Translations under genes and position numbers: made by a program
DNA from: Macrostomum hystrix
Lineage: Eukaryota > Animalia > Platyhelminthes
NCBI GenBank assembly: GCA_950097015.1
Contig: CATNEN010000031.1
Span: forward strand, 310,001-374,000
DNA: 64,000 nucleotides
Direction of reading: 5' to 3'
Shown: one piece after another, positions 17,703 through 46,327 of the stretch
How positions within the stretch are numbered: position 1 is the stretch's first letter
Layout: the number at the start of each line of letters is the position of its first letter
The notes under the pieces: model-generated
What the model saw: the letters and a program-made list of their open reading frames with translations, nothing else
What the model was told of the DNA's origin: nothing
Database searches by the model: none

Positions 17703-18186
17703 CGGTGTCGTTGCTGCGACTTCTGAATCCGTCTTTCCTGGATGCTTGCAGTGTTATTTTATTTTATCTGGCAGTAAATGCGCCAGTTTGCTATTCTAAA
17801 TTTCTGTCTTCTGTGCGTGTCTGTCTTTTGCAGCTATTTAGTGTTTAAAAGTGAAACACTACCGGCCGCTCTAAGCCAATGCAATCTGCACAAAGAGCCC
17901 CTGACGCACCAATGATGTACTTGTTGCTGTCGCGTTGTGCACAGCGAGAAGTTCTACCAGCGCATGTGCCGGACTGCGACAAAAATTCACACGGCTGTGC
18001 GAGAGCTTGCCACAAGTCACTGCTAAATATGGCCAAAATTGTGAGGATGGCGAAACGCAAGTGCTGTTCAAGCGCTTTATAGTTGAAGCATTTTAGCCTG
18101 AATTCATAATGCGAACGGTCAGTTAATTCTGCGCAAAAATCTGCAAGACTTTGAGGTTGTAAAAATTGACGGCTTTCTAATGAAGA

Positions 18187-19866
18187 TGGATATTGGCCTG
18201 AAAGTAGATATTGGCCTGAAAGTAGATATTGGCCATGAAAGTAGATATTGGCCATGAAAGTAGATGTTGGCATTGGTAGATATTGGCCATGAAAGTAGAT
18301 ATTGGCCATGAAAGTAGATATTGGCCTGAAAGTAGATATTGGCCATGAAAGTAGATATTGGCCATGAAAGTAGATGTTGGCATTGGTAGATATTGGCCAT
18401 GAAAGTAGATATTGGCCATGAAAGTAGATATTTGCAATGGTAGATATTGGCCATGAAGGTAGATATTGGCAATGGTAGATATTGGCAATGGTAGATATTG
18501 GTCATGAAGGTAGATATTGGCAATGGTAGATACTGGCAATGGTAGATATTGGCAATGGTAGATATTGGCAATGGTAGATATTGGCAATGGTAGATATTGG
18601 CCATGGTAGATATTGGCCATGGTAGATATTGGCAATGGTAGATATTGGCAATGGTAGATATTGGCCATGGTAGATATTGGCAATGGTAGATATTGGCAAT
18701 GGTAGATACTGGCAATGGTAGATATTGGCCATGAAGGTAGATATTGGCCATGAAGGTAGATATTGGCAATGGTAGATATTGGCAATGGTAGATATTGGCA
18801 ATGGTAGATATTGGCAATGGTAGATATTGGCAATGGTAGATACTGGCAATGGTAGATATTGGCAATGGTAGATACTGGCAATGGTAGATATTGGCCATGA
18901 AGGTAGATATTGGCAATGGTAGATATTGGCAATGGTAGATATTGGCAATGGTAGATATTGGCAATGGTAGATATTGGCCATGGTAGATATTGGCAATGGT
19001 AGATATTGGCCATGGTAGATATTGGCCATGGTAGATATTGGCAATGGTAGATATTGGCCATGAAGGTAGATATTGGCCATGAAGGTAGATATTGGCAATG
19101 GTAGATATTGGCCATGAAGGTAGATATTGGCAATGGTAGATATTGGCAATGGTAGATATTGGCAATGGTAGATATTGGCCATGGTAGATATTGGCCATGG
19201 TAGATATTGGCAATGGTAGATATTGGCAATGGTAGATATTGGCAATGGTAGATATTGGCAATGGTAGATATTGGCCATGGTAGATATTGGCAATGGTAGA
19301 TATTGGCCATGGTAGATATTGGCCATGGTAGATATTGGCAATGGTAGATATTGGCCGTGGTAGATATTGGCAATGGTAGATATTGGCCATGAAGGTAGAT
19401 ATTGGCCATGAAGGTAGATATTGGCAATGGTAGATATTGGCAATGGTAGATATTGGCAATGGTAGATATTGGCAATGGTAGATATTGGCAATGGTAGATA
19501 TTGGCCATGGTAGATATTGGCCATGGTAGATATTGGCAATGGTAGATATTGGCAATGGTAGATATTGGCAATGGTAGATATTGGCAATGGTAGATATTGG
19601 CCATGGTAGATATTGGCCATGGTAGATATTGGCAATGGTAGATATTGGCAATGGTAGATATTGGCCATGGTAGATATTGGCAATGGTAGATATTGGCAAT
19701 GGTAGATATTGGCAATGGTAGATATTGGCAATGGTAGATATTGGCAATGGTAGATATTGGCAATGGTAGATATTGGCAATGGTAGATATTGGCCATGGTA
19801 GATATTGGCAATGGTAGATATTGGCAATGGTAGATATTGGCAATGGTAGATATTGGCCATGGTAGA
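18187..19866. repeat. 16-bp minisatellite with 19-bp variants, ~100 copies
   Basis: Units atattggcaatggtag and atattggccatgaaggtag; source of three 460-585 aa spurious ORFs. Confidence 0.95.
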
Positions 19867-20124
19867 TAGTGTCCAACCTGAAGAGAAGTCAATCAATGAT
19901 TAAGCTGACATGCTCACTTTATTTAGTTAAAGTTTCTGCTGCTTCCAATTAGCTCTAACATGAGCACAAAATACAAGCTGCTGTACTTGAGTGCTATATA
20001 ATTTTCAATACATACAGACATAAATATAGGAGACTATGCACAGAAGTGAGTTCCTATGCTTGCATTATTTTTTCATCACTATTCGCTGAGTTAGCAGTCG
20101 CTCTGTTTGAAGCCGAATGAACTC

Positions 20125-28433: not shown

Positions 28434-29502
28434 TCAGTCGCCCGAGTCACCTTCGAAATTGGTGATGCACTGCAGGCTGTTCTGGCTGAACCAGTCGGCC
28501 CATTGCGCAGACATCAGCTGATGATAGAAGGGCGTCAACGGCAGCTGTACAGCCAGGCAGCCGTGAAACGGTGGCTCCGACGGCAGCAGGGCGGCCGGCA
28601 CACTGGCATGGAGGGCGGCAACATCGTCGCCGTGATTGTGCACCCGGTCAGCCAGCTTGTTGGGCAGCAAGGCGGAGGCCACGCGGCAGGTGGTGTTAAA
28701 GAACCGGCCGCCTCGAACTACGTTGAGCGCGCAGACTCGCACTGGCAGGGCTTTGTGTACGACGGCGCGGAAGCGGCGAAAGTAGCGCATATCCAAGCGG
28801 CGGATGTGACGCAGGGCCAGGCCGGACATGTCCAGGACCACAGACACTCCGCACACCTTGGTAAGTGCGGAGATTTTTCATATCAAAGCATTGGGTTCTG
28901 GATTTTGATAGTTTCTACATTTCCTGGGCAAATCTGTAGTTTTTTCACTCCCATTTCTCCCTCACCTGCGTGTCCTCCTCCTCCAGGAGGGCCTCCATAA
29001 CAACGCAGGTAGCCCGCACCAGCTCGGTGCTGGAGTATTTGGCGCAGTCCCATTGTCCCAGTCGGTAAAGAACAATACGTCTGCCTTCAGCGTCGCGATG
29101 CGGCAGCACCACCAGCACGCCATCCTCCAGCACCAGCCGCACGCCTGCCGGCCCGTAATCATTGAAGACGTCAGGAAATTTGCGTCGAACGCGCAGGTAG
29201 GACCGAATGCGTTGAAGGGCGCCATCGACGTGGAATTTTCGATGACGCAAGAATTTTAGTAGGAAAGCGTCATCAGTGCGGCAACGCATCGATGTGTCAG
29301 CCAACACTGCAGCGCGCAGAGCTGCTAGAGTGGCCACTCGGGTCTCAGGCGTCTCACCTAGCTCCTCTTCGGCACGACGACGAGCTGCATCTGACAGGCT
29401 GCATGAATACTGCTGCTGCTGTTGCCGAGCGCCAGGCGCCGATAGCTGAGTGGCTGTGGCTGTTTCAGACTGCAAAAAAGTGTTAAAAATCAATTGGCTC
29501 AT
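28434..29502 (-). CDS. CRAL-TRIO lipid-binding protein (alpha-tocopherol transfer protein-like/clavesin family), 2 exons, ~319 aa
   Basis: Exons 29502-28966 and 28856-28434. CRAL-TRIO_N motif AEEELGETPE...RTDDAFLLKFLRHRKFHV; lipid pocket RDAEGRRI, ETQV-type EEEDTQVCGVSVVLDMSG, PVRVCALNVV, RVHNHG and LLPSE. The real 5' end may be the acceptor at 29470. Confidence 0.9.
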
Positions 29503-30873
29503 ATCAGTTAAATAATACTATTAAAAAACAAGAACATAAAAGTAAATTGCTTCGACTAAATTAAAAACATCCCATATTTCCCATTGAATAATTGCATGCA
29601 AGCATATCCTATAGTAAAATATAAGGAAGTTGATAAAGCAGCTATATTTGTGTGGTTTACCAACATGAATATAAAAGTTTATATTTTAATTTTTTTACTG
29701 TATAAGTAAAAATAAGTATAAGTAATAACTGTTACTTTTTTAGTTAGAAAGGAAACAACTAAAGGCACAACCGAACTTTTAAATTGATATTCATAAAACT
29801 TTAACTAGATTATAAGCTATCAACAAAAACTCAAGTTATATATGATAGATTAACAGATATATGATTATAAGTGAACATGTAGTATGTTGTATGTGTGTAA
29901 AAATACTTAGCAAAGCTAATAGTAACATGTAAAGTATAACATGCGTTTTATTACATATTATATTATATAAATGTATATGCTGTTGCATTCTAATAGTTTA
30001 TTTTAAATATTAAATTTTATTTACATATGACATAATGAAACATTCTGCATGGTATACATAATTAATTCTAAATTCTTAAAATTGTTTTCATCTTAAACAT
30101 CGTTAAAGAGACAATAAGTATGTCTATTTTTATGTTATATTTATTTATAAATTACATACAAAGCATACTTGTAGTGTTTTACATGCTAAATGGTTTAGTA
30201 AAGGCTCTATAGCTGGCTGACAAGGATTTTATTTTATTCATTAAAATAATGTTTCCAATCTTTGTTGTTTAAAGACACTATAAATGAATATTCAAAAACA
30301 TAGCGACTGCAAAATGAAATCATCAAATTCTTATTCATTTTTACAATACTGTAGATTATTTTATTTTTATAGCCATTTCAAAAGACGTGTGTAACGATGC
30401 AAAAAAGTTGGATAAGCATTTGATAAAATGTCGCTTAAGCAGCATTGAATTATTAATTTACCAGAAGTAAAGTGTAATATAAAATCGCTGATTATTGACT
30501 AGTTAAGTTGACTTTAGCTTAATTTACTTCCTTAAGTCCTTACTCGTTTGCTAAAATGCTCTGGCGGCTCTAGTGACAAAATTATTGGAAACATTTAATA
30601 AAACCGATAACTTTAAAAACTTTTAGCGATTGCAATACACTATTATAACAAACAAGAAAACGTTTACACTTTGTTTTCGTAAGTTGAATATAATTTAGCA
30701 AAAAAAATGTTTTGTTATCTAGAATATCTTATTTTTGTGTACAGGATTGTCATTTAAATCTAAATACTTTCGCGTTATTGACTATAGAATGATTTCAAAT
30801 TTCTCGTACTCGTAAAAAAGCTCACAAAACTCTATACATTTTTACAAAGCGACCAATTCAAAAGAAGAATGAT

Positions 30874-33800
30874 ATGGCTTTCGAAAGCCAAACGTCTTAT
30901 AATACCAATCTGAGGCGAATTGGTGGCATGGATGATTCGAAAATTTCAAGGTAGTTGAAAATAGTTTATGTACTATCTAATAGTAATATATGTACAGTAA
31001 TATGAAATTATAGATTTGAGCTAAATTATCAATATTCAAGTAAAAATATATTTTTTATGAAAACAAAGCAGACACTAAAAAAGAGACATCCTTCATTGCC
31101 ATCATTTTTGTTATTTTACATTGATTAGAAAACGCCGAATTGTTTTTTTCACTTGAGGGATATTTGGCACTGTCAACCAGTGAAAAAGTTGCTTGTCTAC
31201 TCGTACTTCCAGGGTGACTTTTACACGTCCGAGCCACCTGCATAGCATTGAGGACGCAAATGCACTCCGGCTGCGAATTAACCGCGTTAGCCTCGTTCAG
31301 CAGCTGAACGTCGATCCGGTCATTGAGTATCTGAAGAAGGAGAAAATACTTAACGATGCCGATTTAAAACTGATTAAACGAGGGAGCTCAAAGGCTGATC
31401 AAACAAGAGTATTGCTTGATATCTTACCAACAAAAGATCAGCATACACAATGGTATATGAAGTTTCGGTGAGTGCATGCAAGCGCGTAACGAGTGCGTAA
31501 TAGTAAAAAAGCTGAATACAATGATAATTGTGGCAACGTCTGAATTAAAACTTTGATTTTCGAACAATTTCAGCGAGGCTCTACAGCTGACGGGTGAGCT
31601 TGACTCAGCCACACAACGGATGCACGCAATGCTCGTGGCATTCTTGGATAACACAATCGTTCAGCGACCACTTCAGATGCCAACAGCCGCTTCAAAGCAG
31701 CGGCAGAAGCAGCACCTGGCAAGCGGTAAGCGTCAGCTGGTGCAGGTTCTGCCCGGAATTCCGGCATCGGATGAATCGTCAGCTGACACTGTGGAGTCGG
31801 CTTCGCACAAAGTCCTGTGGAAGGAGCTGAAGGTGGCGTCTAATTTGTCACCGGTTTCAACTGATCTGCCGGCGGCGTGTCGAGACCGGCTGGCCGAGCT
31901 GCCATCCGAGCTGGTTGCGGCGTACAGGCAAGCAGCTGGACAAATTGGGCTTTTTAACTACTGATACTGGCGGGAGTTTGAATTTTAGCCCTGTCATTCG
32001 AGCTTAGGTCAGTTCAAGGGAAGGTGTGGTTAACGGGAGGGATGTGTGGCGGCCCGCCCCAGTCCATGGACTAAACCCAGCCTTTGGAAGACAATCAAGC
32101 TCGACAAGGCTGTCAGACATCAATTTCCAAAGTCGTTAACCCACTGACGCCATGCAGGGCATGGCACACAGACAAGGCCAACTCCATGCTGCGCCGGGAA
32201 CAGGAAGTCCTGAAGCGAGTTCGAGCTGCAGATCAATTTCTCGCCCGCCTGACATCGTCGGGCAGCTCGGCTTCTGGCAAGTCGACGACCTGTCCGCAGC
32301 TCTTATGCCTTCACTCGCCGGTGAAGCGGCTGCTGAAGGACGCGCGCCACTCGCACATGGCCAACAAGCATTTCCACCTGCTGTCCAGCCGCTACCTGGT
32401 CTCACTGGCGCCGGCCCTCGCCACGTCCTACATCGTCCTGGTTGGCCGGTTCTCCGGCTGGTCCCCGTTCGCCGCTCGCAAGCTGGCCAGGCACGGCTTT
32501 CGCCTATTCGACTTCCTCGAAGGCCTGTGCGAATTTAGACTATGCGAGCTGGTGGCAGCCGCGCTCGCTGAATTCGCAGCCAGAGGCGCCGGACTCGCCG
32601 CTCTGGTGCCCGGCTTCAAGGCCAGCGTCCGTCTGATGGAGGCGCGGCTCAACAATGCCCAACTGGCGCTGGCTGATGCCGCCAGACTGGCTGCTAGCGA
32701 AGCCGCCGGACGAATCACTCGACTGTCCTTCGGCCGGGAGCTGCTGAACCAGTCGGAGCTGATGGCGCTGACTGGCCGGCTGCTGCTGGAGCAGGGCAGC
32801 CTCCTGCCGGCGCAGACCTGCTTTGCCACGGCTGTCAATGCAAGTGCTGACAATTTCATGGGCTGAATCGGTGGTTCTGAGTTCGGTTCGTTAAAAAAGA
32901 CTTACGAATCATTTCATTACAATGGACCCAATTACAGAAGGTGGATCTGACAGATATGAACACGGTGTTCAAAGTGCTGTACTATTCTCTAGACGTGTAC
33001 CTGGTGAGATACGAAGAGATCAAAGCGGAAAAGCTGGCAGTTGCCTGCGTTCAGCACGCTATGTAAGCCTTCTTTTGTATTCTGTGATTCCGATATAAAT
33101 CATTTGGTTGCCATGGCTACAACGAAACGACCATTTACGTCCTTTTCAGCAAGTTTTTCAAGCCCCACTCGCCGCAGTACGTTAAGGCTCTGCTGAACTA
33201 CGTGAAATTCTCAAACACCTTCAAAAGGGACGCATTCGGCGTGGAAGTGGCCACGGTAATATGCTCCACAAAGGCTCTTGAATTATCGACAAAATGATCC
33301 CAAATCCTTTCAATAAGTAGATAAACAGAATCCCTCATTCTCCCAGCATGTCGATTAATAGAATCCCTAATTCTCCCATCATGTCGATCAACAGAATCCC
33401 CAATTCTCGCAACATGTCGATCAACAGAATCCCCAATTCTACCAACATGTCGATCAACAGAATCCCCAATTCTACCAACATGTCGATCAACAGAATCCCC
33501 AATTCTACCAACATGTCGATCAACAGAATCCCCAATTCTACCAACATGTCGATCAACAGAATCCCCAATTCTACCAACATGTCGATCAACAGAATCCTCA
33601 ATTCTACCAACATTTCGATCAACAGAATCCCCAATTCTACCAACATTTCGATCAACAGAATCCCCAATTCTCCCAACATTTCGATCAACAGAATCCCAAA
33701 TTCTCCCAGCAATTCAATCCCCCACCGCCACCAGAACGCCGCCCTGTTCGCCCACACGGTGATGGGCTACGAGCACCCGCTGCTGGCCGAGGCCCAGTCC

Positions 33801-36225
33801 CAGCTGGCACTGGCTCGCCTGCTAGCTTCGACAGCCGATGACTCGTCAGCGTCTGGCGCCAGACCGTCCGACATGGCCCTGACCGCCCTGCAGACCGGAC
33901 AGAACGCCTACCCGGCAGGGCATCCCCTATTGGCCGGCTTGATGGTCAACTTCGGCCAGGCGGTGCTGCTGGAAGCCGCCGGGCAGTCCCGGCATCCGAT
34001 GGGCCAGTCGGCTCTCGCCCACTGCCAGCTGGCGACGGCCGCGCTGGCCGACGCTCTGGGAGAGCGAAGCCCGGCGACGGCGCGAGCTCGCCTGATACTC
34101 GGCCAGCTGCTGGCCATGCTGGGTGATGTCAAGCAGGCCGGGGAGCAGATGCGCCGGGCGCACGCGGCTCTGGCGAGAGCCAGCGGACAGCAGACAATGC
34201 AGCAGCCGCTCCAGCAGCAACAACAGGCGCAGAGTCGCAGTCACGTGCTCATGAGATTCCTGCTTGAGTATGCCAAATTTTTCAGGTTTGTACATCTCGA
34301 CCGTATTTGTGAGTACTTTGAGAAACGCTTCTCTGAATGAAGTCCGACTCGTTGTAGTCGGCTGGCAGCCTCATTGATAGCTGGTAGCCTCTCACTGATA
34401 GCTGGTAGCCTCACTGATAGCTGGTAGCCTCACTGATAGCTGGTAGCCTCACTGATAGCTGGTAGCCTCTCACTGATAGCTGGTAGCCTCACTGATAGCT
34501 GGTAGCCTCTAACTGATAGCTGGTAGCCTCTCACTGATAGCTGGTAGCCTCACTGATAGCTGGTAGCCTCTCACTGATAGCTGGTAGCCTCTCACTGATA
34601 GCTGGTAGCCTCTCACTGATAGCTGGTAGCCTCTCACTGATAGCTGGTAGCCTCTCACTGATAGCTGGTAGCCTCACTGATAGCTGGTAGCCTCTCACTG
34701 ATAGCTGGTAGCCTCACTGATAACTGGTCGCCTCTCACTGATAGCTGGTAGCCTCTCACTGATAGCTGGTAGCCTCTCACTGATAGCTGGTAGCCTCTCA
34801 CTGATAGCTGGTAGCCTCTCACTGATAGCTGGTAGCCTCTCACTGATAGCTGGTTGCTTTACATCAGTTCATCCGCTCATTCCACATCCCTCCACGTCTG
34901 CAGGCAAACCGGGCAGCCGCAGCAGGCCCTGCGCCTAGCCAAGCAGGTGGCAGAGAGCACCGAGTGCTACGGCGCCTACATCAACTGGGTGGACGAAGCG
35001 CTGGCCCTGACTGCCAATCTGCTGGCTGAGACTGGTGACACGGCTGGCAGCGAAGAGGCCGCCAAGCGCCGCAGCGAGTGGCTGGCGGAGCACCCGGTGT
35101 ACAAGTCCAGGCTGGACTGGCAGTCACTCAACGCCGGGCCGGACAAGGCCTTCTTCAAGAAGTTCAACTTGTGGACGGAGCGGCGCACTCGAATCATGGG
35201 CCAGTTGAAGGAGCAGAAGCAGCAGCAGCAGCAGAAAGCTGGGGAGGCCGAGGCAGACAGCGGGGAGGCGTCCAAGAGGTTGCGCAAGGCCCTGAAAGAC
35301 TTCGCCGACGACTCGGACGCGCGCTTCCGTTCAACGACTTCTTCGTCCTCATCAGACGAGACTGCGGATGACGCGGCTGCCAAAAAGGCTAAAAAGGAGA
35401 AGAAAAAGGCGCTAAAGAAGCGCAAAGATTTGGAAAGGCTCAAGAGCTCTTCCGGGACCTCCGCTGACTCCCCTGCCGCCTTGAAAGACAAGACTGGCAA
35501 GAACAAGGTGACAGCAAAGAAGGATTCCAGCAGCAGCAGCAGCAGCAGCTCCGACGATGAAGCTGCAAAAGCGAAAGCGAAACAGAAGCCGAAAGCAGAC
35601 AAGGAGAAGACACACAAAGACAAGAGAGGAAAGCAGCCTGCCCATAGTAGCAGCTCTGCGGATGAACTTCTCAGGGTCGCGAAGGACAAGAAGCCGGAAG
35701 TACAACGGGAAAAGGCAAAGAAGGACGAAGAGTCTTCTGAGAGCAGCAGCTCCGCGGATGAAGGCGTCAAGAAGAAAAAGCCCAAAAAAATCAAGAAAGT
35801 GAAGGCAACAAAAGAGAAGGTGAAGGATAAGGCAAAGACGGGACAAAAGGACAAAAAGGACAAGAAAAAGGATAGGAAAAAGGACAAGAAAAAATCATCA
35901 AGCAGCAGCAGCAGCAGCTCCTCGTCAAGCAGCAACTCTGACGACGATAAAAAAGAGAAGCACAAGAAGATAGACTGCTCGGCGCAACAAGGCGATAAAA
36001 AAGCCGACAAAGAAAAAAGCTTGGACAAGCAATTGAAACCGAGCAAAAACGGCAGGGCCTCATCAAGTTCTAGCGCCAGCGATCTGGAGAAAAGCGACCC
36101 AAAAAAAGCCGTCGATTGCTCAGTAACCTCTGCAAGTAGCTCGGACGACAACGGGACATCGAAGAGATTCAAGACTGTTAAAACGGCGAAAAACGGACAG
36201 GACAATGAGATGATTAGGCTCAAGA
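30874..36225 (+). CDS. CARD-domain protein with TPR-like helical repeats and a Lys/Ser-rich region (exons 1-8 of a probable larger gene)
   Basis: Exons 30874-30950, 31213-31467, 31574-31927, 32158-32839, 32938-33062, 33150-33255, 33735-34285 and 34904-36225 chain in frame (two donors are GC or weak GT). Exon 2 has a CARD pattern (LRINRVSLVQQLNVDPVIEYLKKEKIL...TRVLLDILPTK). Exons 4-8 have KLC/NPHP3-type TPR motifs (MGYEHPLLAEAQSQLA; YPAGHPLLAGLMVNFG; LGERSPATARARLILG). Confidence 0.72.
33340..33712. repeat. 33-bp minisatellite in CARD-gene intron 6, ~11 copies
   Basis: Unit tcgatcaacagaatccccaattctaccaacatg; ends ~20 bp before acceptor 33734. Confidence 0.92.
34372..34853. repeat. 21/19-bp minisatellite in CARD-gene intron 7
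   Basis: Unit cactgatagctggtagcct(ct). Confidence 0.93.
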
Positions 36226-36280
36226 GTAAGAAAGTTCACATTTATTCGTTTTTTAATCTTAAGCTTCGGCTGAGCCACAG

Positions 36281-37445
36281 GCTGCACATCTGGCCGAGCA
36301 GGACAGGTGTATTTCTGCCTATCTAATGAAAACTGTCTTAAACTCGCAGTTGTCCTTGTCGGCGACTCCGGAGTTGGCAAGTCCAGCCTCGTGACGCGCT
36401 TCGTTGAAGGGACCTTCAAGCAGCAGATGTTCAGCACTATCGGCGTGGACTTCTGCGCCAAGAACTGCACAGTGCATGACCGCAGCTTCAGGCTGCAGAT
36501 CTGGGACACAGCCGGGCAGGACAGGTAATCACAGGACTGGCTTGCCGGTTGACAACCTGCGATGTGCCGGAACCTTAAGAAGTGGAAAGTCTGGGACACG
36601 TGGAACACTCCAGGACCTAGGTGTCCATGGTCATCAAAGAAATCAACACCCGCACCTTACCAAACAGCAGAAGAGTCCAAAGAACAGAGAAATTTCTTCA
36701 TCTCACACCTGCCCAAAGAGCTGAGAAATCCCCATGTCACACCTGACCAAAGAGCTGAGAAATCCCCATCCCACAACTGACCAAAGAGCTGAGAAAACCC
36801 CATCTCACACCTGACCAAAGAGCTGAGAAATCCCCATCCCACAACTGACCAAAGAGCTGAGAAATCCCCATCCCACAACTGACCAAAGAGCTGAGAAATC
36901 CCCATCCCACAACTGACCAAAGAGCTGAGAAATCCCCATCCCACAACTGACCAAAGAGCTGAGAAATCCCCATCCCACAACTGACCAAAGAGCTGAGAAA
37001 TCCCCATCCTACACCTGACCAAAGAGCTGAGAAATGGCGATCATCCACTTGTTCTCCAACGCAAATCACAAACAGATTCCGATCGCTGGGCCCCAGCTAC
37101 TATCGCGGCTCGGATGCCGCCATGCTGGTGTTTGACGCTACAAATCGGTCCAGCTTTGAGCACTGCTCACGCTGGCTGGAGGAGCTCCGGATGGCCACAG
37201 AGGCCAGCCGGCTGACTGTCCTGCTAGTAGGCAACAAGGCAGACTTGCTGACTGGCGAGCATCTGGCATCGGCTGTATCCAGAGACGAAGCCGAGAGATT
37301 CGCTCGCGAACACCAACTCGATGGCTACGCTGAGGTCAGCGCGCTAGACGGCAGCGTCAGCGGCGCCTTCAAACAATTGATGAAGCTGCGCCTGCGGACT
37401 GACAGCGGCAAGGCGCAACAAGGAGATGGCATTCTGCTCGTGTAG
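36281..37445 (+). CDS. Rab-family GTPase domain, 2 exons; probably the C-terminus of the CARD-TPR protein
   Basis: Exons 36281-36524 and 37076-37445. G1 GDSGVGKS, RabF1 IGVDF, G3 WDTAGQD, RabF3 RFRSL, RabF4 YYRG, RabF5 LVFDAT, G4 NKAD, G5 EVSAL. No in-frame ATG after the stop at 36271; no C-terminal Cys. Confidence 0.88.
36710..37033. repeat. 34-bp minisatellite in the Rab-domain intron, ~9-10 copies
   Basis: Unit gagaaatccccatcccacaactgaccaaagagct. Confidence 0.92.
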
Positions 37446-37609
37446 GCTTGTCTATGATAGAAACTATTGCATGAGTAGTACTAGTACGTACAAGGTCAGT
37501 TCACACAATAGACAAACAGAACAGAAGTTTATCAAGATTCTAAGCTTAAGATTTGCAGCTATATCTGTAGATATAACTACTCGGGTAGATTCTTAGATGT
37601 CGCGACCTG

Positions 37610-38322
37610 TAGCTAGCATATAGCCACATCTGTAGCTAGGATATAGCCACATCTGTAGCTAGGATATAGCCACATCTGTAGCTAGGATATAGCCACATCT
37701 GTAGCTAGGATATAGCCACATCTGTAGCTAGGATATAGCCACATCTGTAGCTAGAATATAGCCACATCTGTAGCTAGGTTATAGCCACATCTGTAGCTAG
37801 GATATAGCCACATCTGTAGCTAGGATATAGCCACATCTGTAGCTAGGATATAGCCACATCTGTAGCTAGGATATAGCCACATCTGTAGCTAGGATATAGC
37901 CACATCTGTAGCTAGGATATAGCCACATCTGTAGCTAGGATATAGCCACATCTGTAGCTAGGATATAGCCACATCTGTAGCTAGAATATAGCCACATCTG
38001 TAGCTAGGTTATAGCCACATCTGTAGCTAGGATATAGCCACATCTGTAGCTAGGATATAGCCACATCTGTAGCTAGGTTATAGCCACATCTGTAGCTAGG
38101 ATATAGCCACATCTGTAGCTAGGATATAGCCACATCTGTAGCTAGAATATAGCCACATCTGTAGCTAGGTTATAGCCACATCTGTAGCTAGGATATAGCC
38201 ACATCTGTAGCTAGGATATAGCCACATCTGTAGCTAGGATATAGCCACATCTGTAGCTAGGATATAGCCACATCTGTAGCTAGAATATAGCCACATCTGT
38301 AGCTAGGATATAGCCATATCTC
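37610..38322. repeat. 23-bp minisatellite, ~31 copies
   Basis: Unit tagctaggatatagccacatctg; variant pair agaatat then aggttat recurs three times. Confidence 0.95.
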
Positions 38323-39383
38323 TAGCCAGAAGACAGTCATGTGTAAGGTTAATACTACCTGTGAGTTAGATCCGTAGTCAAAGAATAAACCAATTCAGTT
38401 TACAAAAACTAAGCTAAACTTATCACAAAATTAACTTTTTGTCCAACCGAAACACGTCCCTAGACTAACTTTAGATATACGAACTTTGCCTGCAAATATT
38501 TTTTAATGTATTTTAATAATAACCTGGCATTCATTAATATTATGTTACTCTACTCTCACCTTTAATGCAGATAATGTAACGCCACTTACTAATTATTCCG
38601 CAGATCTACTAAAGATATGGATTGTTTAAAATGCAGCTTAAAAACATTCTCTATATAAAATATTTATTGAACAGTTATTTGTTTGAACACTTTTATAGCA
38701 TAACTCTTAACAATATCTTCTTTTTTTCGTACAGCAAATACATGACAGCTTAACGTGTCAAATTCAGAGCACCTATTATAACTGTTACTTGAATTTAACG
38801 CTATCTGTGTTCATTTTGTTTATTGATTGAAAAAATGAAGTCAAGTAATTAAACTTATATGAATAATTGGAAATAGATAAGAAAAAGGCATTGGTTTGTC
38901 GCCATCATTCAGTTATAATTTATTATGTAAATTTGGTATCGATAAGCTTAAAACTTAATTTAACGATCAGCTGAGTAGTATAGTCAGAAAATGGCAGTAA
39001 AAGTTTGTGTCACTTCACAAACAAATAATTGTCTTGCTACGGCACATGTAGAAAAGCAGATCATTGTTAAAAATGGTTAAAGCATCTAAAAATTGACACA
39101 AAAATATTTATGTACATGCAAAAAAGCATAATTGGGTAGCAGATCATTAGATAAGCTCAGGACTTCAGGATAGGTCAAATTATAAAGCTTCGGATTAATT
39201 AGCATGCGGGCGAAAAAGCATTGAGATATTTTTTTAATAAAATAAAAAAGAAATGATTGAATAATCAATAACACGCTTGAACTGCAGGTAAAATACTGGG
39301 CTGTGTTTTAGGGTACACAATAAAACAAGTGGCCATAGCCTTTGCAATAATAATTATAGTGAACGACAATGGGAGTGTACCGT

Positions 39384-41298
39384 CTAGCTGACCAAGGCTG
39401 GTGTGCGGCACAGCACTTCGGCCACTTCCTCCTTGGTGATCCAGATGGCCCCGCTCTCTGATGATGAAATCGAACTGCTGGTGGTCACCGAGTCCGTCAG
39501 GGCTGATGACTGCTGCTGCTGCTGCTGCTGAGAGGAACTCGGCTTGCGAACAGCAGGCTTTACAGCTGATCTACCTGCCGCACCTGTGGGCTTCTGAGCG
39601 CTCGGCTTAAACTGCTCTTGCTCCTGCTTCTGCTGTCTCTGAGGCAGTTGCTTCTGCTGCTCCGGCAGTTCCTGCTTCTGCTGTCTCTGAGGCAGCTGCT
39701 TCTGCTGCTCCGGCAGCTCCTGCTTCTGCTGTCTCTGAGGCAGCTGCTTCTGCTGCTCCGGCAGGTCCTGCTTCTGCTGTCTCTGAGGCAGTTGCTTCTG
39801 CTGCTCCGGCAGGTCCTGCTTCTGCTGCCTCTGAGGCAGTTGCTTCTGCTGCTCCGGCAGGTCCTGCTTCTGCTGTCTCTGAGGCAGTTGCTTCTGCTGC
39901 TCCGGCAGTTCCTGCTTCTGCTGTCTCTGAGGCAGTTGCTTCTGCTGCTCCGGCAGGTCCTGCTTCTGCTGTCTCTGAGGCAGTTGCTTCTGCTGCTCCG
40001 GCAGGTCCTGCTTCTGCTGTCTCTGAGGCAGTTGCTTCTGCTGCTCCGGCAGTTCCTGCTTCTGCTGTCTCTGAGGCAGTTGCTTCTGCTGCTCCGGCAG
40101 GTCCTGCTTCTGCTGTCTCTGAGGCAGTTGCTTCTGCTGCTCCGGCAGGTCCTGCTTCTGCTGTCTCTGAGGCAGTTGCTTCTGCTGCTCCGGCAGGTCC
40201 TGCTTCTGCTGTCTCTGAGGCAGTTGCTTCTGCTGCTCCGGCAGTTCCTGCTTCTGCTGTCTCTGAGGCAGTTGCTTCTGCTGCTCCGGCAGGTCCTGCT
40301 TCTGCTGTCTCTGAGGCAGCTGCTTCTGCTGCTGCTGCTGTCTTCGTTGCTCATGTTTCTCTTGCCTTTGCGACAACTTTTTTTGTTTCTCCCGCTGCGT
40401 TTGTTGCTGTGAATTCTGCTGCATTGGCTGTTGCATATGAAGCTGCCGCTGCTGCTGCTGCGGTTGCTGCTGAGCAGTGCAAGGGCTGCCGTTTGTAACG
40501 CCCCCACCTAGCCTGGCAACAGCCGACTTATTTAGACGCACGCTGGTTGCGTTGGCCCGACGAATTGACAGCGGCTGGCGAACTGTGAATGCGGAAAATT
40601 CGAAAAAATTTGAACTATTTACGAGTTGAAACCTAGTTGAAATCATTACTAACGAAATACTCGTAAGCGTTCTCACCAGGCGAGCCGCCGATACTGGACA
40701 CCCGGCCTCGGCCGATGCTGCCTCCACGGCCACCGCAGCCGCCAACGAGCTTCCTCGGCGGGCCGGGCGCACTGTCAGCTGACTTCGGCCGTTTAACAAT
40801 GCGCGCCCGCCCAATGCCGGCTGCTGAGGTGGCCGAAGAATCCGTAGGCGACTCCGGCGGCGCAAAAGAGCTGCTCGCATCGTCATCGATTATGTCAACG
40901 CTGACTTCGTCAACGTCATCGTCACAGATTGTTGAGGCGGCTTCTGAGTCGCCGCCGCCACCGCTGGAGATGGTCAGATTGAAGGTGATGGGCGACTGTT
41001 GCCGACGAAGCAGAGACGAGCCAGAAGCCGAGGATGGTGACGCCGATGATGTTGTCACCTGAAGGGTGAAGCGCTGAGCCGGACTGCCGCTGTCCAGACT
41101 GCCGGCTGGCGATGAGCCCGCCGAGAATCCGGAGTCCTTAGAACGACGGCCACCTCCGACTGAGGCAGCGGCCGCGCCTGAGGCGGAGGCGCCGATAGAC
41201 AATGGCGAGAATGAAGGCGCCGGTATGGATGATCGGGCCGGAGTTGGCGCCACTATGCCCAGTGGCTTTCCACCACCGGTGAGCATTGATGAAGCACC

Positions 41299-41337
<39 letters not shown>

Positions 41338-44300
41338 TGTTGCGCTAAGAGGCGCAGGAATCCACGATCCAGCGGAGGCGGGCAGCTTGGATGGCGTAGG
41401 TGTCAGTTTGGGGGCCGGTATCACGCTTGGCTTTGCTTCACCGCCGACAGAAGGCCGCTTGGCGCCGCTAACAGTGGCGGGCGTCGGGAGCCTTGAAGCC
41501 AAAGCGGACGGACTCACGGGCACCCAGGATGTTCGGGCCACTAATGGCTTCGGAGCCGGCAGTCTGGATGCGGCGGAGCCTTCAAGACTTTGGCGCACCG
41601 ACGCAATCGGAATGGGCGGTGGCGGAGGAGGGGTCGGAGTTGATTCCGGCTTAGCCAGGCCGAACAGGATGCCAGTAGCGTCTCCGTCGTCATCTTCGTC
41701 ACTAAGGTCCAAGTCTGTGTCCGTGTCCTGCGAGGCGTCAACTAAATCAGTGCCTTTCCTGCTGTTGTAGCCGGCCAATCCGGCATTAGCAGTTGAGGCG
41801 TGCGGACTCTCGCGAATGGCCGCGGCGTCGATTTCCATGGAGGAGCCGCTCAGATCGCTGGTGTCGATATCGGATAGCTCAAGTGTCAGCTGGCCGGCCA
41901 CCGGCTCCTCGTCGCTGTGGATGCTGAAGGTGCGACTGTCAATCGGGCGTCCGGGCGCTTCAGCGCTAGTCCGGCTGCCGCCGCTGCTGCTCTGACGGTC
42001 GGCGTCACGCAGTTCAACAGGCGACGGCGAGCTGCGCTCCTCTGTCAGGGTATACAGCCGCCTGTCAGTGCCGGCGTGGAGCCTGCATGCCAGGCGGTGT
42101 TGCTGATGAACCAAGTGCAGCTTGTTGCTGCTGCTGCTGCTGCTGCTGCTGCCGGGGGCGGGTTGACGAGGCGGCGCCGGTGGCGGCAGCCGGGCCTGCT
42201 GTTGGCTGGCCGCCGAGACGGTTGGCAACGCCTGCTGAGTTCTCGGTTTCGACGGTCCCGCCTCCCTGTTGTCCAGCGCCTCCGCTAGCTGTTGCTGCTG
42301 CTGCGGTTGCTGCTTTCCTCCGTCGAAACCAATCCAGAAAAAAGACGCTTTGTTGTTGCTGCCAGCGTTGCTGCTGATGCTGCTGCTGTCGCTAGCATTG
42401 CTGCTGCTGTCTCCGATGTCGGCATTGGCGGCGATAAAGCTAGCGCTTGAGGCGGTAGGCTTTGCCCGGGCAGCAGCCGCTGCTTGCTGCTGCTGCTGCT
42501 GCTGCTTTTTGGGCATTGCGGATGAGATGCAGGCCTCCAGTAGCAGGTCCGCATTGTCACTGGAACAGCTGGACGATCGGCTGGACGTCTGCGCCGAAGT
42601 TCGATAAGAGAAATGAGCCGGCGTGTCCTCCGTCTTGTAGGTGACCTGCAGCGAAGCGATTAGAAAGGAACTCCATCATGACAAGTCCCTTATTCCCGCT
42701 GACAACACAGGCCCACACCCATATCCGAAAAATGCTTACAGTTTTCTCGTCGCTACGACTGGCAGCAGTTGGCGCGACACGAGCGGCGCCACCTTGGCTA
42801 ACGCTGGCGACATCATCGTCCTCCTCGACGATGGCATTGGCAATGGCGTCGTCCTCCTCTTCCCCGATGCCAACGTTGATGTCCATGTCCAGCACTGCTT
42901 CGTCTTCATCGTCCAGGGCCAGAGCCACATCCGGTTCCTCGACTTCATCGTCGTCATTTTCCAAGACATTGTTATCGTTTTCAATATCGTCCATATCGTC
43001 GATGTCATTATCACCGACGAGCGGCCGCGTCGATGGCAACGAAGCCTTCAAAGCCAGGTTCTGTTGTTGATGTTGCTCATCACCGCCATAGTTCAAGTCG
43101 ACGCTAGACGGAGGCGACGGAGTGTGCTCAACGTGGAAGACGGTCGGCCTATCGTCTGTGGTTGCAATCGCCTTGGCAGAAACGGCGGCAGCCGCAGCCG
43201 CTCGGGTCGTCCGCGGCTTCGCTGGCGGCATGCCGCTTCGAATGCAGTCCTGCAGAATCTGCGAGTCGAGGCCGTCATCTTCGTCCCTAGACGATGAAGA
43301 AGCCGCAGAGCTGGAAGTTTTGCTGCCGCAGCTACCGGCAACGTGTCGATGCCGCGACGCTCCTGGAATTCGCTGAGGCAGAGTTTGACGTTGAATCTGA
43401 CGCAATTGCTGAGGCTGCTGCTCCGGAGGCTGCGGCAGGGGCATCTGCTCCGAGGGGGTGTCGGGCAGGCAGCTGGGCGACAACGGCGGCCCAGCTGAGC
43501 GCCCGCCAGTGCCAGCGCTGTAGGAGCTGGCCCGAGATGACCGCAAAGAATCCAGGCCGACGCTGTCGAGCGAGTGTCCTGATGAGCCTCGGCTAAAAAC
43601 GAGCGGCGTCGGCTGCACAGAGCCGCCCTGAGCGGAGGCCGGGGCGGAGACGGCTGCAGAAGCAGCCGGTGCTCTCGGGGGAGTGGCAGCCACAGTGGTT
43701 GCAGTTCCAGCTCCGCAGTTGACAGCGCACTCCAGAATAGGTCCGCCGCTGCTGCCTTCCTCTTCCTCGTCCGGCGGTCCGCCGACCGCGCCAGCTAATC
43801 GGACGCACTGAGGCAGCGTCAGCTCCGATCTACCGGAAGAGTTGTAGTGCACGGAGGCCGACAGCGGCTGCTGATTGGCCCGGTCGTGCGTGACGTCCGA
43901 CACGGCGCTGCGCAGGCTATCCTGACTGGCCGATCGCTGCGGACTGCACAGCAGAGGCCGTGGCGAGCCGGATGATCCTGCAGCGACTGCTGATGATGCT
44001 GCTTGCGCCGCTGGCGCCGGCTTTGAGGCCGACGATGACGCAGACGGAGCCGCCGAAGACGAACGGGCGGCTGTTGTCATCTGTTGACGCCCGCCAAGCA
44101 AATTCGCCTGCTGGCTGCTGCCGCTGCTGCTGCGACTTCGGTTACCTGCGTTGCTGCTGCCGCTGCTGCCTGTGCTTCCAATGCGCGGATTGTTGTGAGT
44201 CGCATGGTGCTGCGGCGGCGGCGGCGGTAGTTCGGCCGAGTCGTGCAGCCTGGCTGAGACCAGATTCTTTAGTGCGCTGGCGCTGGCAAGGCGAATCACC

Positions 44301-46327
44301 TGAGATGCCAATAGATCAAATGCTAACGCGTCTAATACGTTTAGTAGGCAAAAGCACAGGAAAAGAAACTCAACAGGATATTTCAAATTACCTTGTGCTT
44401 TGACTGCACCAGGCAGCGAAGCATCGGCACAGCGCCAAGTCGCGTTAGCAGCCTCTGATCAGCCAGGTGATTCGAGGACAAATTCCACAGGATGCCGCAT
44501 GCGTTAGCTACCACAGTTAGTGAGGCCGAGCGCAGCTGGGTTAGCAGGACGGGAAATGCAGGCCGGACAGCAGCGCGGAGGTCCTCGCGCACGGCCACAA
44601 CGGAGCTGATGTTGCGAAGGACGCCGCCGCCAGTCTCAGCCAGGCTGTGATTGCAGGTCAGGCAGGCGCACAGCAGGCCGAGGGAGCCGGGAACTGCGCA
44701 GATGGCCTCCTTATTGGCCGTGGAGTGAGCGGACAGGTTCCACAGGGCTGACAGCAGGCTGCGGAGTGTGGACTCACGCCTCACCTGGGAATTGATTGGA
44801 GAGTCCAATAATTTGGGATCAAATTAGGAGGCAAATCTAGTGGGACATTGATCTGTTGTAAAGCGTTCTCATTCTTGATGGGTTATGGCAGTGGAATGGG
44901 AAGATTTGGAAAGGAGGAAGATACTGAGGAAGAGAAAGATTTAGAATTGAGACGGGTGCTACTAGTAGATGAGTCCAAAAAGCGGAACAGGAAGATCAGA
45001 TCAGATAGAATCAAACAAAAATTTTAATTGTTGGCCTAGGGGCTAAGTCTTGTATCCAAGGTAAACAACCGGTTGCTGTGGTAGTTAAAATAAGGCCAAG
45101 CCAGACCTGCAGCGCTGCCCTGGCCAGAACACCGGCCGCGCCAAGTCGGCCGAGCACTGCTCTGCACTCGGCATCGGCCTGCCAGCTGAGATTGCGAATC
45201 ACAGCCGCCGTGACTTGGCAGAGCTCCTCCTCGGCTGGCGGCTGTTGAACTCCCGGCGGAGATTTCAGCTGTTCTACTAGGGACCAGACGGCCGGAGCCC
45301 GTAGGCAGACCCGACGCTTGCAGGCGGCGTCGCCGTAGCTCAGGTTGGTGAGGGCGCTGGCGGCGTAGCGTCGCAGGAACTGACTACAGGGCGGCGGCCG
45401 GTACTGAGTGTGGCAGAAGTCGACAAGCAGCAAGTCTGATAGGCATTCGACTCCGCCGAGCTCGGCAATGGCCGGCCGGTCGGTGTCCGAGTAAGACAAT
45501 TCGAGCAGGACAGACAGCGAGCTGCAGCAGCGGTCGCGCAGGTCGTCCAAGACGGCGGCAGATGGTGGCGGAGAGGTCGGCGAAGTCAGCTGACCGCAGC
45601 GGCAGAGGGTGGCGCGGACAGCGTCACAGTAGACCCGCACCTGTTCCAGGTGGCACAGGATGAGCTTCTCTTTGGCGCCGGCCTCTGGACAGTCTGCGAG
45701 GTTGGCCAGGATCTGGGCCGCGCGGTCGCGAACTTGACGCGGCGGCAGATTGGCATGCGGACTGGGGCAGCGGGACTCCGGGCAGGGGTCGCGGGTCTCC
45801 GGGCCGTACAGCAGCGGCAGCACTAGGCTGTAGGGCTGGCCCTGGCGCAGGCGGCTGCAGTCGGCGGGGTTGGCGGACATCCGCAGCAGGGCTTGGCTCA
45901 ACTGATCGGGATCGTCAGCTTGAGGTTCGCCAGCGATTCCGAAGCCAGCGCCGTCTAGAGAGTCGAGATCGTCGAGATCGGTGAGGGCGCATGTTGAAGT
46001 AACAGTTGAATCGTCCAGGTGCTGCGGCTGCTGCTGCTGCTGTCTGCGACGGTGCTGCTGACCAGATCGCGAGGCGGCGCTGCCACCGCCGCCGCCGGCG
46101 ATGCTGGCAGCCGGACTGGCCGGGCTGTTCAAAGGAGGCGGCTGGCGAATGCCGACGCCAGCCGCGGCTGCAGCTACCTCGTCAGCGGCGTAGACGCTGG
46201 CCAGCCAGGCAGACAGCTGTGCGGATGCGCGCGACGCGGATGCGGCGGCCGATGTCGCCGATGATACCGACGGTCTGCCTTGATGTCGCTGCTGCTGCAG
46301 AGTCTGCGTAGCCTGAGTAACTGGCAT
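39384..46327 (-). CDS. APC: Adenomatous polyposis coli homolog, 5 coding exons, ~2110 aa
   Basis: Exons 46327-45107, 44784-44392, 44299-42740, 42645-40677 and 40582-39384 (6342 nt, phases compatible). APC N-terminal conserved block (LSQALLRMSANPADC; LEQVRVYC) and armadillo repeats (RRYAASALTNLSYGD; ESTLRSLLSALWNLSAHS; VANACGILWNLS; SKHKVI). Two 20-aa repeats (PTVFHVEHTP; TYKTEDTPAHFS) and two SAMP repeats (ILQDCIRSGMP; LLEACISSAMPKK). The last exon is less certain. Confidence 0.92.
39620..40335 (-). repeat. 48-bp coding minisatellite, 15 copies, encoding (QQKQLPQRQQKQ[D/E]LPE)n in the APC last exon
   Basis: Stop-free in the APC frame and flanked by Gln-rich non-repeat coding sequence. Confidence 0.85.

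What the first reader, a model, noticed from the sequence alone, without database searches (positions are those of the whole stretch)
30874..37445. Candidate CARD-TPR-Rab fusion: a death-fold 'large Rab' GTPase
Seen: ten exons chain in frame (4086 nt, 1361 aa) from a CARD, through helical and TPR-like repeats and a ~320-aa Lys/Ser-rich stretch, to a complete Rab G-domain. The link is a 55-nt phase-1 intron (A|gtaaga at 36226 to ccacag|GC at 36280) that shifts the 490-aa ORF into the Rab frame. The Rab exon has no ATG of its own (in-frame stop at 36271). Retaining the intron stops translation at 36326, giving a Rab-less isoform. Established: known large Rabs (Rab44, RASEF/Rab45, CRACR2A) carry EF-hand and coiled-coil extensions, and CARDs nucleate caspase and innate-immune complexes. 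I know of no CARD+TPR+Rab architecture. Inference: a sensor (TPR), signalling (CARD) and GTP-switch protein, like an NLR/STAND receptor with a Rab in place of the NTPase, possibly linking immunity or cell death to trafficking.
Basis: partly seen in the sequence, partly recalled or inferred. Interest (0 to 1): 0.88.

Follow-up and report, generated by a model that had tools for sequence, protein, structure and literature searches.

The report
CARD–APPBP2-like–Rab fusion gene in flatworm
This flatworm gene really does make one long messenger RNA for a protein that joins a cell-death adaptor domain (CARD), a peptide-binding helical body related to human APPBP2, and a Rab-type GTP switch, a combination I found only in Macrostomum and in no paper I searched.

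Summary
Ten exons (30874-37445, + strand) chain into a 4017-nt, 1338-aa ORF. This gives ...IRLK|IVLVGDSGVGKS. Intron-less contigs from three public runs carry this joint. One 4219-nt contig fits the whole model.

Pfam confirms the CARD and a split Ras/Rab domain. The "TPR" body is a full-length homologue of APPBP2, the Cul2 substrate receptor. It belongs to an uncharacterised lophotrochozoan CARD–APPBP2-like family of about 800 aa (annelid, brachiopod, mollusc, nemertean, bryozoan) that ends without a Rab. Only Macrostomum members carry the Rab. M. lignano PAA53536.1 has the same architecture and the same phase-1 intron before strand β1, and its locus holds four tandem Rab cassettes.

The Rab domain keeps its G and RabF motifs but has no C-terminal cysteine. 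APPBP2's RxxG pocket residues are not conserved.

The STAND/NLR analogy is not supported. Function is inferred: a CARD adaptor on a peptide-binding solenoid with a soluble GTP switch.

The parts
30874..30950 (+). Exon 1, with the start codon at 30874 (25 codons + 2 nt).
   Evidence: The in-frame chain is shown. The N-terminus is colinear with homologue P0001. The 4219-nt contig leaves about 44 nt of 5' UTR before this ATG.
31213..31467 (+). Exon 2, which encodes the CARD (Pfam core at 31271-31441).
   Evidence: Pfam CARD E 2.8e-10, 40.5 bits against a cutoff of 23.9. The nearest solved CARDs are those of caspase-9, cIAP1, RAIDD and CARD11.
31574..31927 (+). Exon 3: a conserved post-CARD helix (WY..FR, LV.FLDNTI), a poorly conserved linker, and the start of the APPBP2-like body (from about 31854). 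It ends at a GC donor (31928).
   Evidence: Searches show colinearity with P0001 and P0002 across the junction. One search aligns P0002 189-803 to APPBP2 26-579.
32158..32839 (+). Exon 4: the N-terminal helices of the APPBP2-like solenoid. It ends at a GC donor (32840).
   Evidence: A search of 1.84 billion representatives with this exon returned only CARD–APPBP2-like proteins.
32938..33062 (+). Exon 5: solenoid, continued.
33150..33255 (+). Exon 6: solenoid, carrying the family's conserved motif P.Y.KALL.Y..FSN.F..D.FGVE.A.
33735..34285 (+). Exon 7: TPR repeats of the solenoid.
   Evidence: Pfam TPR_12 at 3.6e-5, below the curated cutoff. The loose end before 34901 in three runs equals the end of this exon.
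34904..36225 (+). Exon 8: the last TPRs and family C-terminus (to about 35222), then the Lys/Ser-rich disordered linker (about 35223-36203), then NEMIRLK, which leads into strand β1 of the Rab.
   Evidence: Contigs of runs X2-X4 cover it with 0-1 differences. Non-flatworm family members end where the linker begins.
36226..36349 (+). The 124-nt phase-1 GT..AG intron that links the body to the Rab exons.
   Evidence: The joint 36225->36350 appears in one contig in each of three runs, with 175 nt on the shorter side and no depth inside. The same intron position and phase occur in M. lignano Rab cassettes 1 and 2.
36350..36524 (+). Exon 9: the N-half of the Rab domain, with the P-loop GDSGVGKS, switch I (STIGVDF) and DTAGQ.
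   Evidence: Pfam Ras 5.8e-22. The best solved matches are Rab1B, Rab1A and Sec4 at about 1.6e-16.
37076..37445 (+). Exon 10: the C-half of the Rab domain (RFRSL, YYRG, GNKAD, SAL), a tail with no cysteine, and the stop at 37443-37445.
   Evidence: Pfam Ras 6.6e-20. The loose end behind 36524 equals the start of this exon. No Cys occurs in the last 30 residues.

Best explanation
Shown. This is one gene of a Macrostomum flatworm that encodes a 1338-aa protein with four parts:
1. An apoptosome-type CARD.
2. A solenoid of about 600 aa, homologous to almost the whole of APPBP2/PAT1.
3. A disordered linker of about 330 aa in which acidic-serine clusters alternate with lysine blocks.
4. A Rab1-like G domain with intact nucleotide motifs but no prenylation cysteine.

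It is the Macrostomum form of a lophotrochozoan CARD–APPBP2-like family. The Rab cassette was added through a phase-1 intron immediately before strand β1.

Inferred mechanism, with odds.
- The solenoid binds a peptide ligand that differs from APPBP2's RxxG degron (about 0.6).
- The CARD couples that binding to another CARD protein, most plausibly an initiator caspase or Apaf-1-like adaptor, by homotypic contact (about 0.5).
- The tethered Rab domain cannot insert into membranes by itself. It acts as a GTP/GDP-dependent address or gate, docking the adaptor to Rab1-type effectors and regulators or to its own solenoid (about 0.35).
For: Gene model.
- The ORF is in frame across ten exons.
- The joint 36225->36350 appears in intron-less contigs of three runs, and their loose ends match the end of exon 7 and the start of exon 10.
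- The 4219-nt contig has 2194 nt before exon 8 (2150 nt of CDS plus 44 nt) and 528 nt after exon 9 (370 nt of exon 10 plus 158 nt).
- No indels occur at any junction when aligned with P0001, P0002, P0005 and P0020.
- The flanking genes are on the minus strand: a CRAL-TRIO gene upstream and a long ORF downstream. The Rab exons are therefore not a downstream operon gene.

Domains.
- Pfam finds CARD and Ras.
- A profile of the non-flatworm family members matches model residues 31-823 at 392 bits.
- The family profile matches human APPBP2 residues 40-575 at E 4e-41.
- The AF2 model of P0002 (pLDDT 80-95 in the solenoid) matches 8JAL at Z 36.3, rmsd 3.8 Å, 526 residues. The next unrelated TPR proteins score Z 21.

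Conservation of the fusion.
- M. lignano P0002 and P0033 carry CARD + solenoid + Ras.
- P0002 is 41% identical over the body and 47% identical over the Rab domain.
- The intron position is the same: RLIK|LLLIG and YQMK|VLLIG.
- Of 186 large proteins with a similar Rab domain, the only three among the 120 listed that carry CARD are from M. lignano.

G domain.
- GDSGVGKS, T in switch I, DTAGQ, NKAD and SAL are present. The RabF-like motifs IGVDF, RLQIWDTAGQD, RFRSL, YYRGS and LVFDAT are present. There is no C-terminal Cys.
Against: - No experiment or binding data exists for any family member. Every functional step is inferred from domain identity.
- The transcript evidence consists of assembled contigs from one study, not single long reads.
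- Single window exons, and a Macrostomum-only profile, do not hit APPBP2 by sequence. The link rests on the wider family profile and on the predicted structure of the M. lignano relative.
- The N-half of the Rab domain in that model has low confidence.
- The linker is absent from P0002, so it may be dispensable.
Confidence: 0.8

Rival explanations
1. The same fused protein works as APPBP2 does, as the substrate receptor of a Cullin-2-type ubiquitin ligase. The CARD would then bring CARD proteins (caspases, adaptors) to the ligase, or auto-inhibit it as in cIAP1. The Rab domain would regulate or localise the ligase.
For: The structural match to APPBP2 starts at chain residue 26, inside the N-terminal VHL-box region that the paper places at helices α1-α3 (PMC10614623). 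The profile match starts at residue 40. An LP.E-hydrophobic motif is conserved across the family at that place. The cIAP1 CARD, which lies in an E3 ligase, is the second-best solved CARD match.
Against: No counterpart of the first APPBP2 helix, where I would expect the Elongin-binding BC box, was aligned. The segment before it is disordered in the model. The degron-pocket residues Y345, R380, E387, E388 and R437 are not conserved. Zinc ligand C54 aligns to a proline in the family profile. Elongin or Cul2 binding cannot be tested with these tools.
Confidence: 0.25
2. There are two genes. A CARD–TPR gene ends in exon 8, and a separate small Rab is made from an internal start (the ATG at 36210 would give MIRLK-IVLVGDSG...) or by spliced-leader addition. 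On this reading the fused contigs are read-through or assembly chimeras.
For: The genome uses spliced leaders and has operon-like clusters (earlier notes). The ATG at 36210 would give a natural-looking Rab N-terminus. M. lignano has tandem Rab cassettes that could be separate genes.
Against: The canonical in-frame GT..AG joint appears in three runs at the same depth as the flanking exons. No ATG lies between the stop at 36271 and 36350. A leader ending in AUG joined at 36350 would be out of frame and would stop after 14 codons (read; that the leader ends in AUG is recalled, not tested). No loose end at 36350 or near 36200 was seen. The fusion is annotated independently in M. lignano. Both neighbours are on the opposite strand.
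Confidence: 0.04
3. One reading: a STAND/NLR-like receptor in which the Rab replaces the central NTPase and drives ligand-induced oligomerisation of the CARD.
For: The domains present are an effector (CARD), repeats (TPR) and a P-loop NTPase in one chain.
Against: The domain order is CARD–solenoid–linker–Rab, not CARD–NTPase–repeats. No NACHT or NB-ARC was found between the CARD and the repeats. The body is an APPBP2 homologue. The family exists in other phyla without any NTPase. Rab domains are not known to ring-oligomerise as STAND modules do (established knowledge).
Confidence: 0.08
4. The fusion is real but functionally neutral or decaying. The Rab exons were captured by chance and contribute nothing beyond the ancestral CARD–APPBP2-like function.
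For: The ancestral family lacks the Rab. The linker is not conserved between the two Macrostomum proteins. One M. lignano cassette has lost the switch II glutamine, reading DTAGAER.
Against: All nucleotide-binding motifs are intact in both the window's Rab and P0002's, despite only 47% identity. The intron position is conserved. The exons are retained in the dominant transcript.
Confidence: 0.1

Closest known systems
APPBP2 / PAT1 (human; CRL2 substrate receptor for R-x-x-G C-degrons; PDB 8JAL; PMC10614623)
   Same: The central body of about 600 aa is homologous along nearly the whole chain. The family profile matches at E 4e-41 over APPBP2 40-575. The predicted structure of the M. lignano relative matches at Z 36.3 over residues 26-579. 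It is a TPR superhelix able to enclose a peptide.
   Different: This protein has an N-terminal CARD and a C-terminal Rab, which APPBP2 lacks. The RxxG pocket residues are not conserved. No detectable counterpart exists for the first VHL-box helix, and zinc-dimer ligand C54 is not conserved.
Lophotrochozoan 'amyloid protein-binding protein 2-like' CARD proteins (e.g. Lingula XP_013395164.1; Owenia CAH1775459.1; Lineus, Argopecten, Watersipora, Physella and Tubulanus entries)
   Same: They share the CARD, the conserved post-CARD helix and the APPBP2-like solenoid, and they are colinear end to end. A profile without the flatworm sequences matches window residues 31-823 at 392 bits.
   Different: These proteins are about 790-850 aa and stop 10-20 residues after the solenoid. 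They have no linker and no Rab domain. None is characterised.
Macrostomum lignano PAA53536.1 / A0A267DWG7 (P0002) and A0A1I8FWW3 (P0032)
   Same: Same CARD–solenoid–Rab architecture and the same intron before β1.
   Different: Only 41% (body) and 47% (Rab) identical. The linker is short, at about 55 aa. The locus has four tandem Rab cassettes, whereas the window has one.
Large Rab GTPases (CRACR2A/Rab46, Rab44, RASEF/Rab45)
   Same: A long N-terminal extension with a Rab domain at the C-terminus of one polypeptide.
   Different: Those proteins carry EF-hands and coiled coils and, in CRACR2A at least, a prenylated C-terminus (established knowledge). Here there is no EF-hand, a CARD and an APPBP2-like solenoid instead, and no C-terminal cysteine.
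DAPK1 and other ROCO proteins (death domain + Roc GTPase in one chain)
   Same: A death-fold domain and a Ras-superfamily G domain in one signalling protein. This is precedent for a GTP switch that regulates a death-fold adaptor in cis.
   Different: ROCO proteins have a Roc-COR tandem and usually a kinase. Here the G domain is a true Rab by its RabF-like motifs and its best matches to Rab1. There is no COR and no kinase.

Membership tests
CARD (death-fold) domain proteins | Sequence match to the CARD profile above the curated threshold | tested here: met
   PF00619 at 40.5 bits against a cutoff of 23.9, E 2.8e-10, in exon 2. The homologues also score above the cutoff.
Rab family small GTPases | Complete G1-G5 nucleotide-binding motifs | tested here: met
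   GDSGVGKS, switch I Thr, DTAGQ, GNKAD and SAL are read in the translation. Pfam Ras matches both halves.
Rab family small GTPases | Rab-specific RabF motifs (IGVDF, KLQIWDTAGQE, RFRSIT, YYRGA, LVYDIT; recalled from Pereira-Leal and Seabra 2000) | tested here: met
   IGVDF, RLQIWDTAGQD, RFRSLG, YYRGS and LVFDAT are present. The best solved relatives are Rab1, Sec4, Rab35, Rab2 and Rab11.
Rab family small GTPases | C-terminal cysteine motif for geranylgeranylation | tested here: not met
   The last 30 residues hold no Cys, and the protein ends ...GDGILLV. P0002 has a single Cys five residues from its end, which is not a CC, CXC or CAAX motif.
Large Rab GTPases (CRACR2A, Rab44, Rab45) | N-terminal EF-hand plus coiled coil preceding the Rab | tested here: not met
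   Pfam finds no EF-hand in any exon. The extension is a CARD plus an APPBP2-like solenoid.
APPBP2 homologues (fold and descent) | Full-length similarity to the APPBP2 TPR solenoid | tested here: met
   The family profile matches 8JAL at E 4e-41. The P0002 model matches at Z 36.3 over 526 aa. The window protein matches the family profile at 392 bits. Single window exons do not hit APPBP2 directly.
APPBP2 as an R-x-x-G C-degron receptor | Pocket residues Y345, R380, E387, E388, R437 (also E469, S479, Y515) | tested here: not met
   The aligned positions in the window protein and in the family differ at nearly all of these sites (using the mappings). The residues are taken from PMC10614623.
APPBP2 as a CRL2 substrate receptor | N-terminal VHL box (BC box + Cul2 box) that binds Elongin B/C and Cul2 | tested here: inconclusive
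   The structural alignment begins at APPBP2 residue 26 and the profile alignment at residue 40. A conserved LP.E-hydrophobic motif lies there, but the first helix has no aligned counterpart. Binding is not testable here.
STAND / NLR-type receptors | Central NACHT or NB-ARC NTPase between the effector domain and the repeats | tested here: not met
   No such domain was found between the CARD and the TPRs. The only weak NACHT and nSTAND hits are P-loop noise inside the Rab exon. The P-loop domain is C-terminal.

The most novel reading that the evidence does not exclude
A Rab-addressed death-fold adaptor. The tethered, non-prenylated Rab domain would set, by its GTP state, where or whether the CARD–APPBP2-like receptor engages its CARD partner. 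In the M. lignano paralogue, the common CARD–solenoid body would be spliced to any of four tandem Rab cassettes, giving a small combinatorial set of differently addressed adaptors. This would directly wire membrane-traffic identity to caspase or innate signalling.
Probability: 0.15. Interest if true: 0.8.

Novelty: new variant of a known kind. Interest (0 to 1): 0.6.

Why it matters
Two points go beyond a domain curiosity.

First, the body of the protein reveals an unnoticed lophotrochozoan family in which a CARD is fused to a homologue of a Cullin-2 degron receptor. This suggests a link between recognition of peptide ends and death-fold signalling outside the usual Apaf-1/NLR schemes.

Second, Macrostomum has appended a soluble Rab switch to this family, and one paralogue carries four Rab cassettes in tandem. 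I found no described protein that joins a CARD to a Rab.

M. lignano has RNAi, in situ hybridisation and transgenesis, so the role of each module is directly testable. Candidate roles are stem-cell turnover, regeneration-associated cell death and immunity.

The case also shows how a phase-1 acceptor placed just before β1 of a Rab lets a small GTPase be plugged onto another gene.

Tried and rejected
Contigs join 36225 to 36350 and leave 36286-36347 uncovered.
- Direct phmmer searches of exon 4 and exon 7 against solved structures gave nothing. A Macrostomum-only profile also gave nothing. The APPBP2 link appears only with the wider family profile and with structure.
- A word-indexed search with P0002 found only M. 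lignano entries. The window's own full-length protein is not in that collection, so no protein id for it was available. Structure prediction was therefore run on P0002 as a proxy.
- The ESM Atlas look-alike search gave only weak leads, below the tool's own trust level: Asgard TPR and GTPase clusters at scores of 0.78 or less.
- Literature searches for CARD+Rab, Macrostomum CARD Rab, and APPBP2+CARD found nothing relevant.
- A BC-box-like string in the window (L...C...L just before the LP.E motif) is not conserved in P0001 or P0002. I dismissed it as chance.
- An operon reading is rejected because both neighbours are on the other strand.
- I did not lay reads on exons 1-7.
Full report
**Observation**

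I rebuilt the gene from the sequence. Ten + strand exons chain into an uninterrupted 4017-nt ORF of 1338 aa:

| Exon | Coordinates |
|---|---|
| 1 | 30874-30950 |
| 2 | 31213-31467 |
| 3 | 31574-31927 |
| 4 | 32158-32839 |
| 5 | 32938-33062 |
| 6 | 33150-33255 |
| 7 | 33735-34285 |
| 8 | 34904-36225 |
| 9 | 36350-36524 |
| 10 | 37076-37445 |

Seven introns are GT..AG and two have GC donors (31928, 32840). Exons are G+C-richer than introns. Three introns and the 3' flank hold minisatellites.

A phase-1 intron of 124 nt (36226-36349) joins ...NEMIRLK to IVLVGDSGVGKS, a natural start for strand β1 of a Rab.

**Transcript evidence**

I laid contigs of four public runs on 34860-36700, a stretch chosen to be free of long repeats.
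- Three runs of one study hold intron-less contigs with 0-1 differences. Each carries the joint 36225->36350 (GT..AG, 175 nt on the short side). Depth is zero across 36286-36347.
- Their loose ends before 34901 spell the end of exon 7. Those behind 36524 spell the start of exon 10.
- The longest contig is 4219 nt. It has 2194 nt before exon 8, where exons 1-7 sum to 2150 nt. It has 528 nt after exon 9, where exon 10 is 370 nt. It therefore fits a complete mRNA with UTRs of about 44 and 158 nt.

No joint at 36280/36281, no retained intron and no Rab-only start was seen. Contigs cannot exclude minor forms.

Every exon junction is colinear, without indels, with homologous proteins.

Both neighbouring genes lie on the minus strand: a CRAL-TRIO gene at 28434-29502 and a long ORF from 39384. 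The Rab exons are therefore not a downstream operon gene.

**Domains**

Pfam finds a CARD in exon 2 (E 2.8e-10, above the cutoff). It finds the two halves of a Ras-family domain in exons 9 and 10 (5.8e-22 and 6.6e-20). TPR_12 in exon 7 is weak.

The CARD is nearest to those of caspase-9, cIAP1, RAIDD and CARD11.

The G domain keeps the P-loop, switch I Thr, DTAGQ, NKAD and SAL, along with Rab-type RabF motifs. Its best solved relatives are Rab1 and Sec4 for the N-half and Rab2 and Rab11 for the C-half. The protein ends ...GDGILLV with no cysteine, so it cannot be geranylgeranylated like ordinary Rabs.

The linker of about 330 aa is 25% Lys and 19% Ser. Six acidic-serine clusters alternate with lysine blocks. 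It is probably disordered and resembles the acidic-serine/basic repeats of nucleolar phosphoproteins; that resemblance is from recall and was not tested.

**What the 'TPR' body is**

A search of 1.84 billion cluster representatives with exon 4 returned 24 proteins. The ten scanned with Pfam were CARD- and/or TPR-bearing, and nine of them carried a CARD. They comprise:
- a 75-82% identical partial protein (P0001);
- M. lignano PAA53536.1 (P0002, 1063 aa);
- proteins of about 800 aa from Owenia, Lingula, Physella, Bulinus and Tubulanus. A profile search later added Argopecten, Lineus and Watersipora.

NCBI names several of these 'amyloid protein-binding protein 2(-like)'.

The link to APPBP2 rests on four results:
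- The Lingula protein matches human APPBP2 at E 2.5e-20.
- The family profile matches APPBP2 residues 40-575 at E 4e-41.
- An AlphaFold2 model of P0002 (solenoid pLDDT 80-95) matches 8JAL with Foldseek E 1.5e-13. VIA-align gives Z 36.3, rmsd 3.8 Å, over 526 residues, model 189-803 against chain 26-579. Other TPR proteins reach Z 21.
- The window's protein matches a profile built without any flatworm sequence over residues 31-823 at 392 bits.

Single window exons do not reach APPBP2 directly.

The body is thus an APPBP2 homologue, not a generic TPR sensor.

APPBP2 is the Cul2 receptor for R-x-x-G C-degrons (PMC10614623). Its pocket residues are not conserved here. Its first VHL-box helix has no aligned counterpart. 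Neither degron specificity nor ligase recruitment can be assumed.

**The Rab addition**

Non-flatworm family members stop 10-20 residues after the solenoid.

P0002 and P0033 of M. lignano have the Rab. They are 41% identical to the window protein over the body and 47% over the Rab.

Among 186 large proteins with a similar Rab domain, the only three of the 120 listed that carry CARD are from M. lignano.

In the M. lignano locus (L001), four Rab cassettes follow the body on the same strand. Each is split after DTAG.xR, like the window's exon 9|10 boundary. Cassettes 1 and 2 have the same phase-1 intron before β1. A UniProt model strings several of them into one 1667-aa protein. The window has only one cassette.

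The fusion therefore predates the split of the two Macrostomum genes. It was built by exon joining at a reusable phase-1 acceptor.

**Mechanism (inferred)**

The most economical reading has three elements:
- a CARD adaptor whose APPBP2-like solenoid binds a peptide ligand;
- a CARD that recruits another CARD protein;
- a tethered, soluble Rab domain that gives GTP-dependent addressing or gating.

The main rival keeps APPBP2's role as a Cullin-2 receptor. The CARD would then act as a recruiting or auto-inhibitory module, as in cIAP1.

The STAND-like picture is disfavoured by the domain order and by the GTPase-free ancestors.

**Novelty**

I found no paper on CARD–Rab or CARD–APPBP2 proteins. 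The architecture sits unremarked in M. lignano database entries.

Earlier notes of this scan call the genome a Macrostomum and mention spliced leaders that end in AUG. This agrees with my homologue evidence. I used the spliced-leader point only for the frame argument against a trans-spliced Rab-only mRNA.

Noticed in passing
L001:16400-23200 (M. lignano NIVC01003072.1, reversed): Four tandem Rab cassettes lie downstream of the CARD–solenoid exons of the P0002 gene. Each has the same two intron positions as the window's Rab. Cassette 2 has lost the switch II Gln (DTAGAER). A 1667-aa UniProt model chains several cassettes. It is unresolved whether they are alternative 3' ends, a multi-Rab protein or separate genes.
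   Followed up: partly
window 17127-17702 (-): A single-exon 191-aa Ras-superfamily GTPase (Pfam Ras 1.5e-44) that looks Rho/Rac-like and ends in a CAAX-type CRIM. It is unrelated to the finding. A long minisatellite ORF lies next to it at 18119-19892.
   Followed up: partly
window 33320-33708, 34370-34854, 36699-37035, 37607-38326: Minisatellites with units of 33, 21, 34 and 23 nt and 10-31 copies sit inside introns 6, 7 and 9 and just past the 3' end of the gene. None enters the coding sequence.
   Followed up: partly
window 28434-29502 (-): A CRAL-TRIO (SEC14-like) gene in at least two exons is the divergent upstream neighbour. The shared region of about 1.4 kb (29503-30873) should hold both promoters.
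   Followed up: partly
window 39384-44386 (-): Long minus-strand ORFs converge on the gene's 3' end. Pfam gave no hit for the two ORFs I scanned, which lie further downstream (40633-42516 and 42557-44386).
   Followed up: no
proteins P0042-P0045, P0048, P0052 (Rotaria spp. and unnamed ENA entries): Rotifer and environmental proteins of 600-1600 aa score several-fold above a single Rab domain match. This suggests that multi-Rab tandem proteins, or merged gene models, exist outside flatworms.
   Followed up: no
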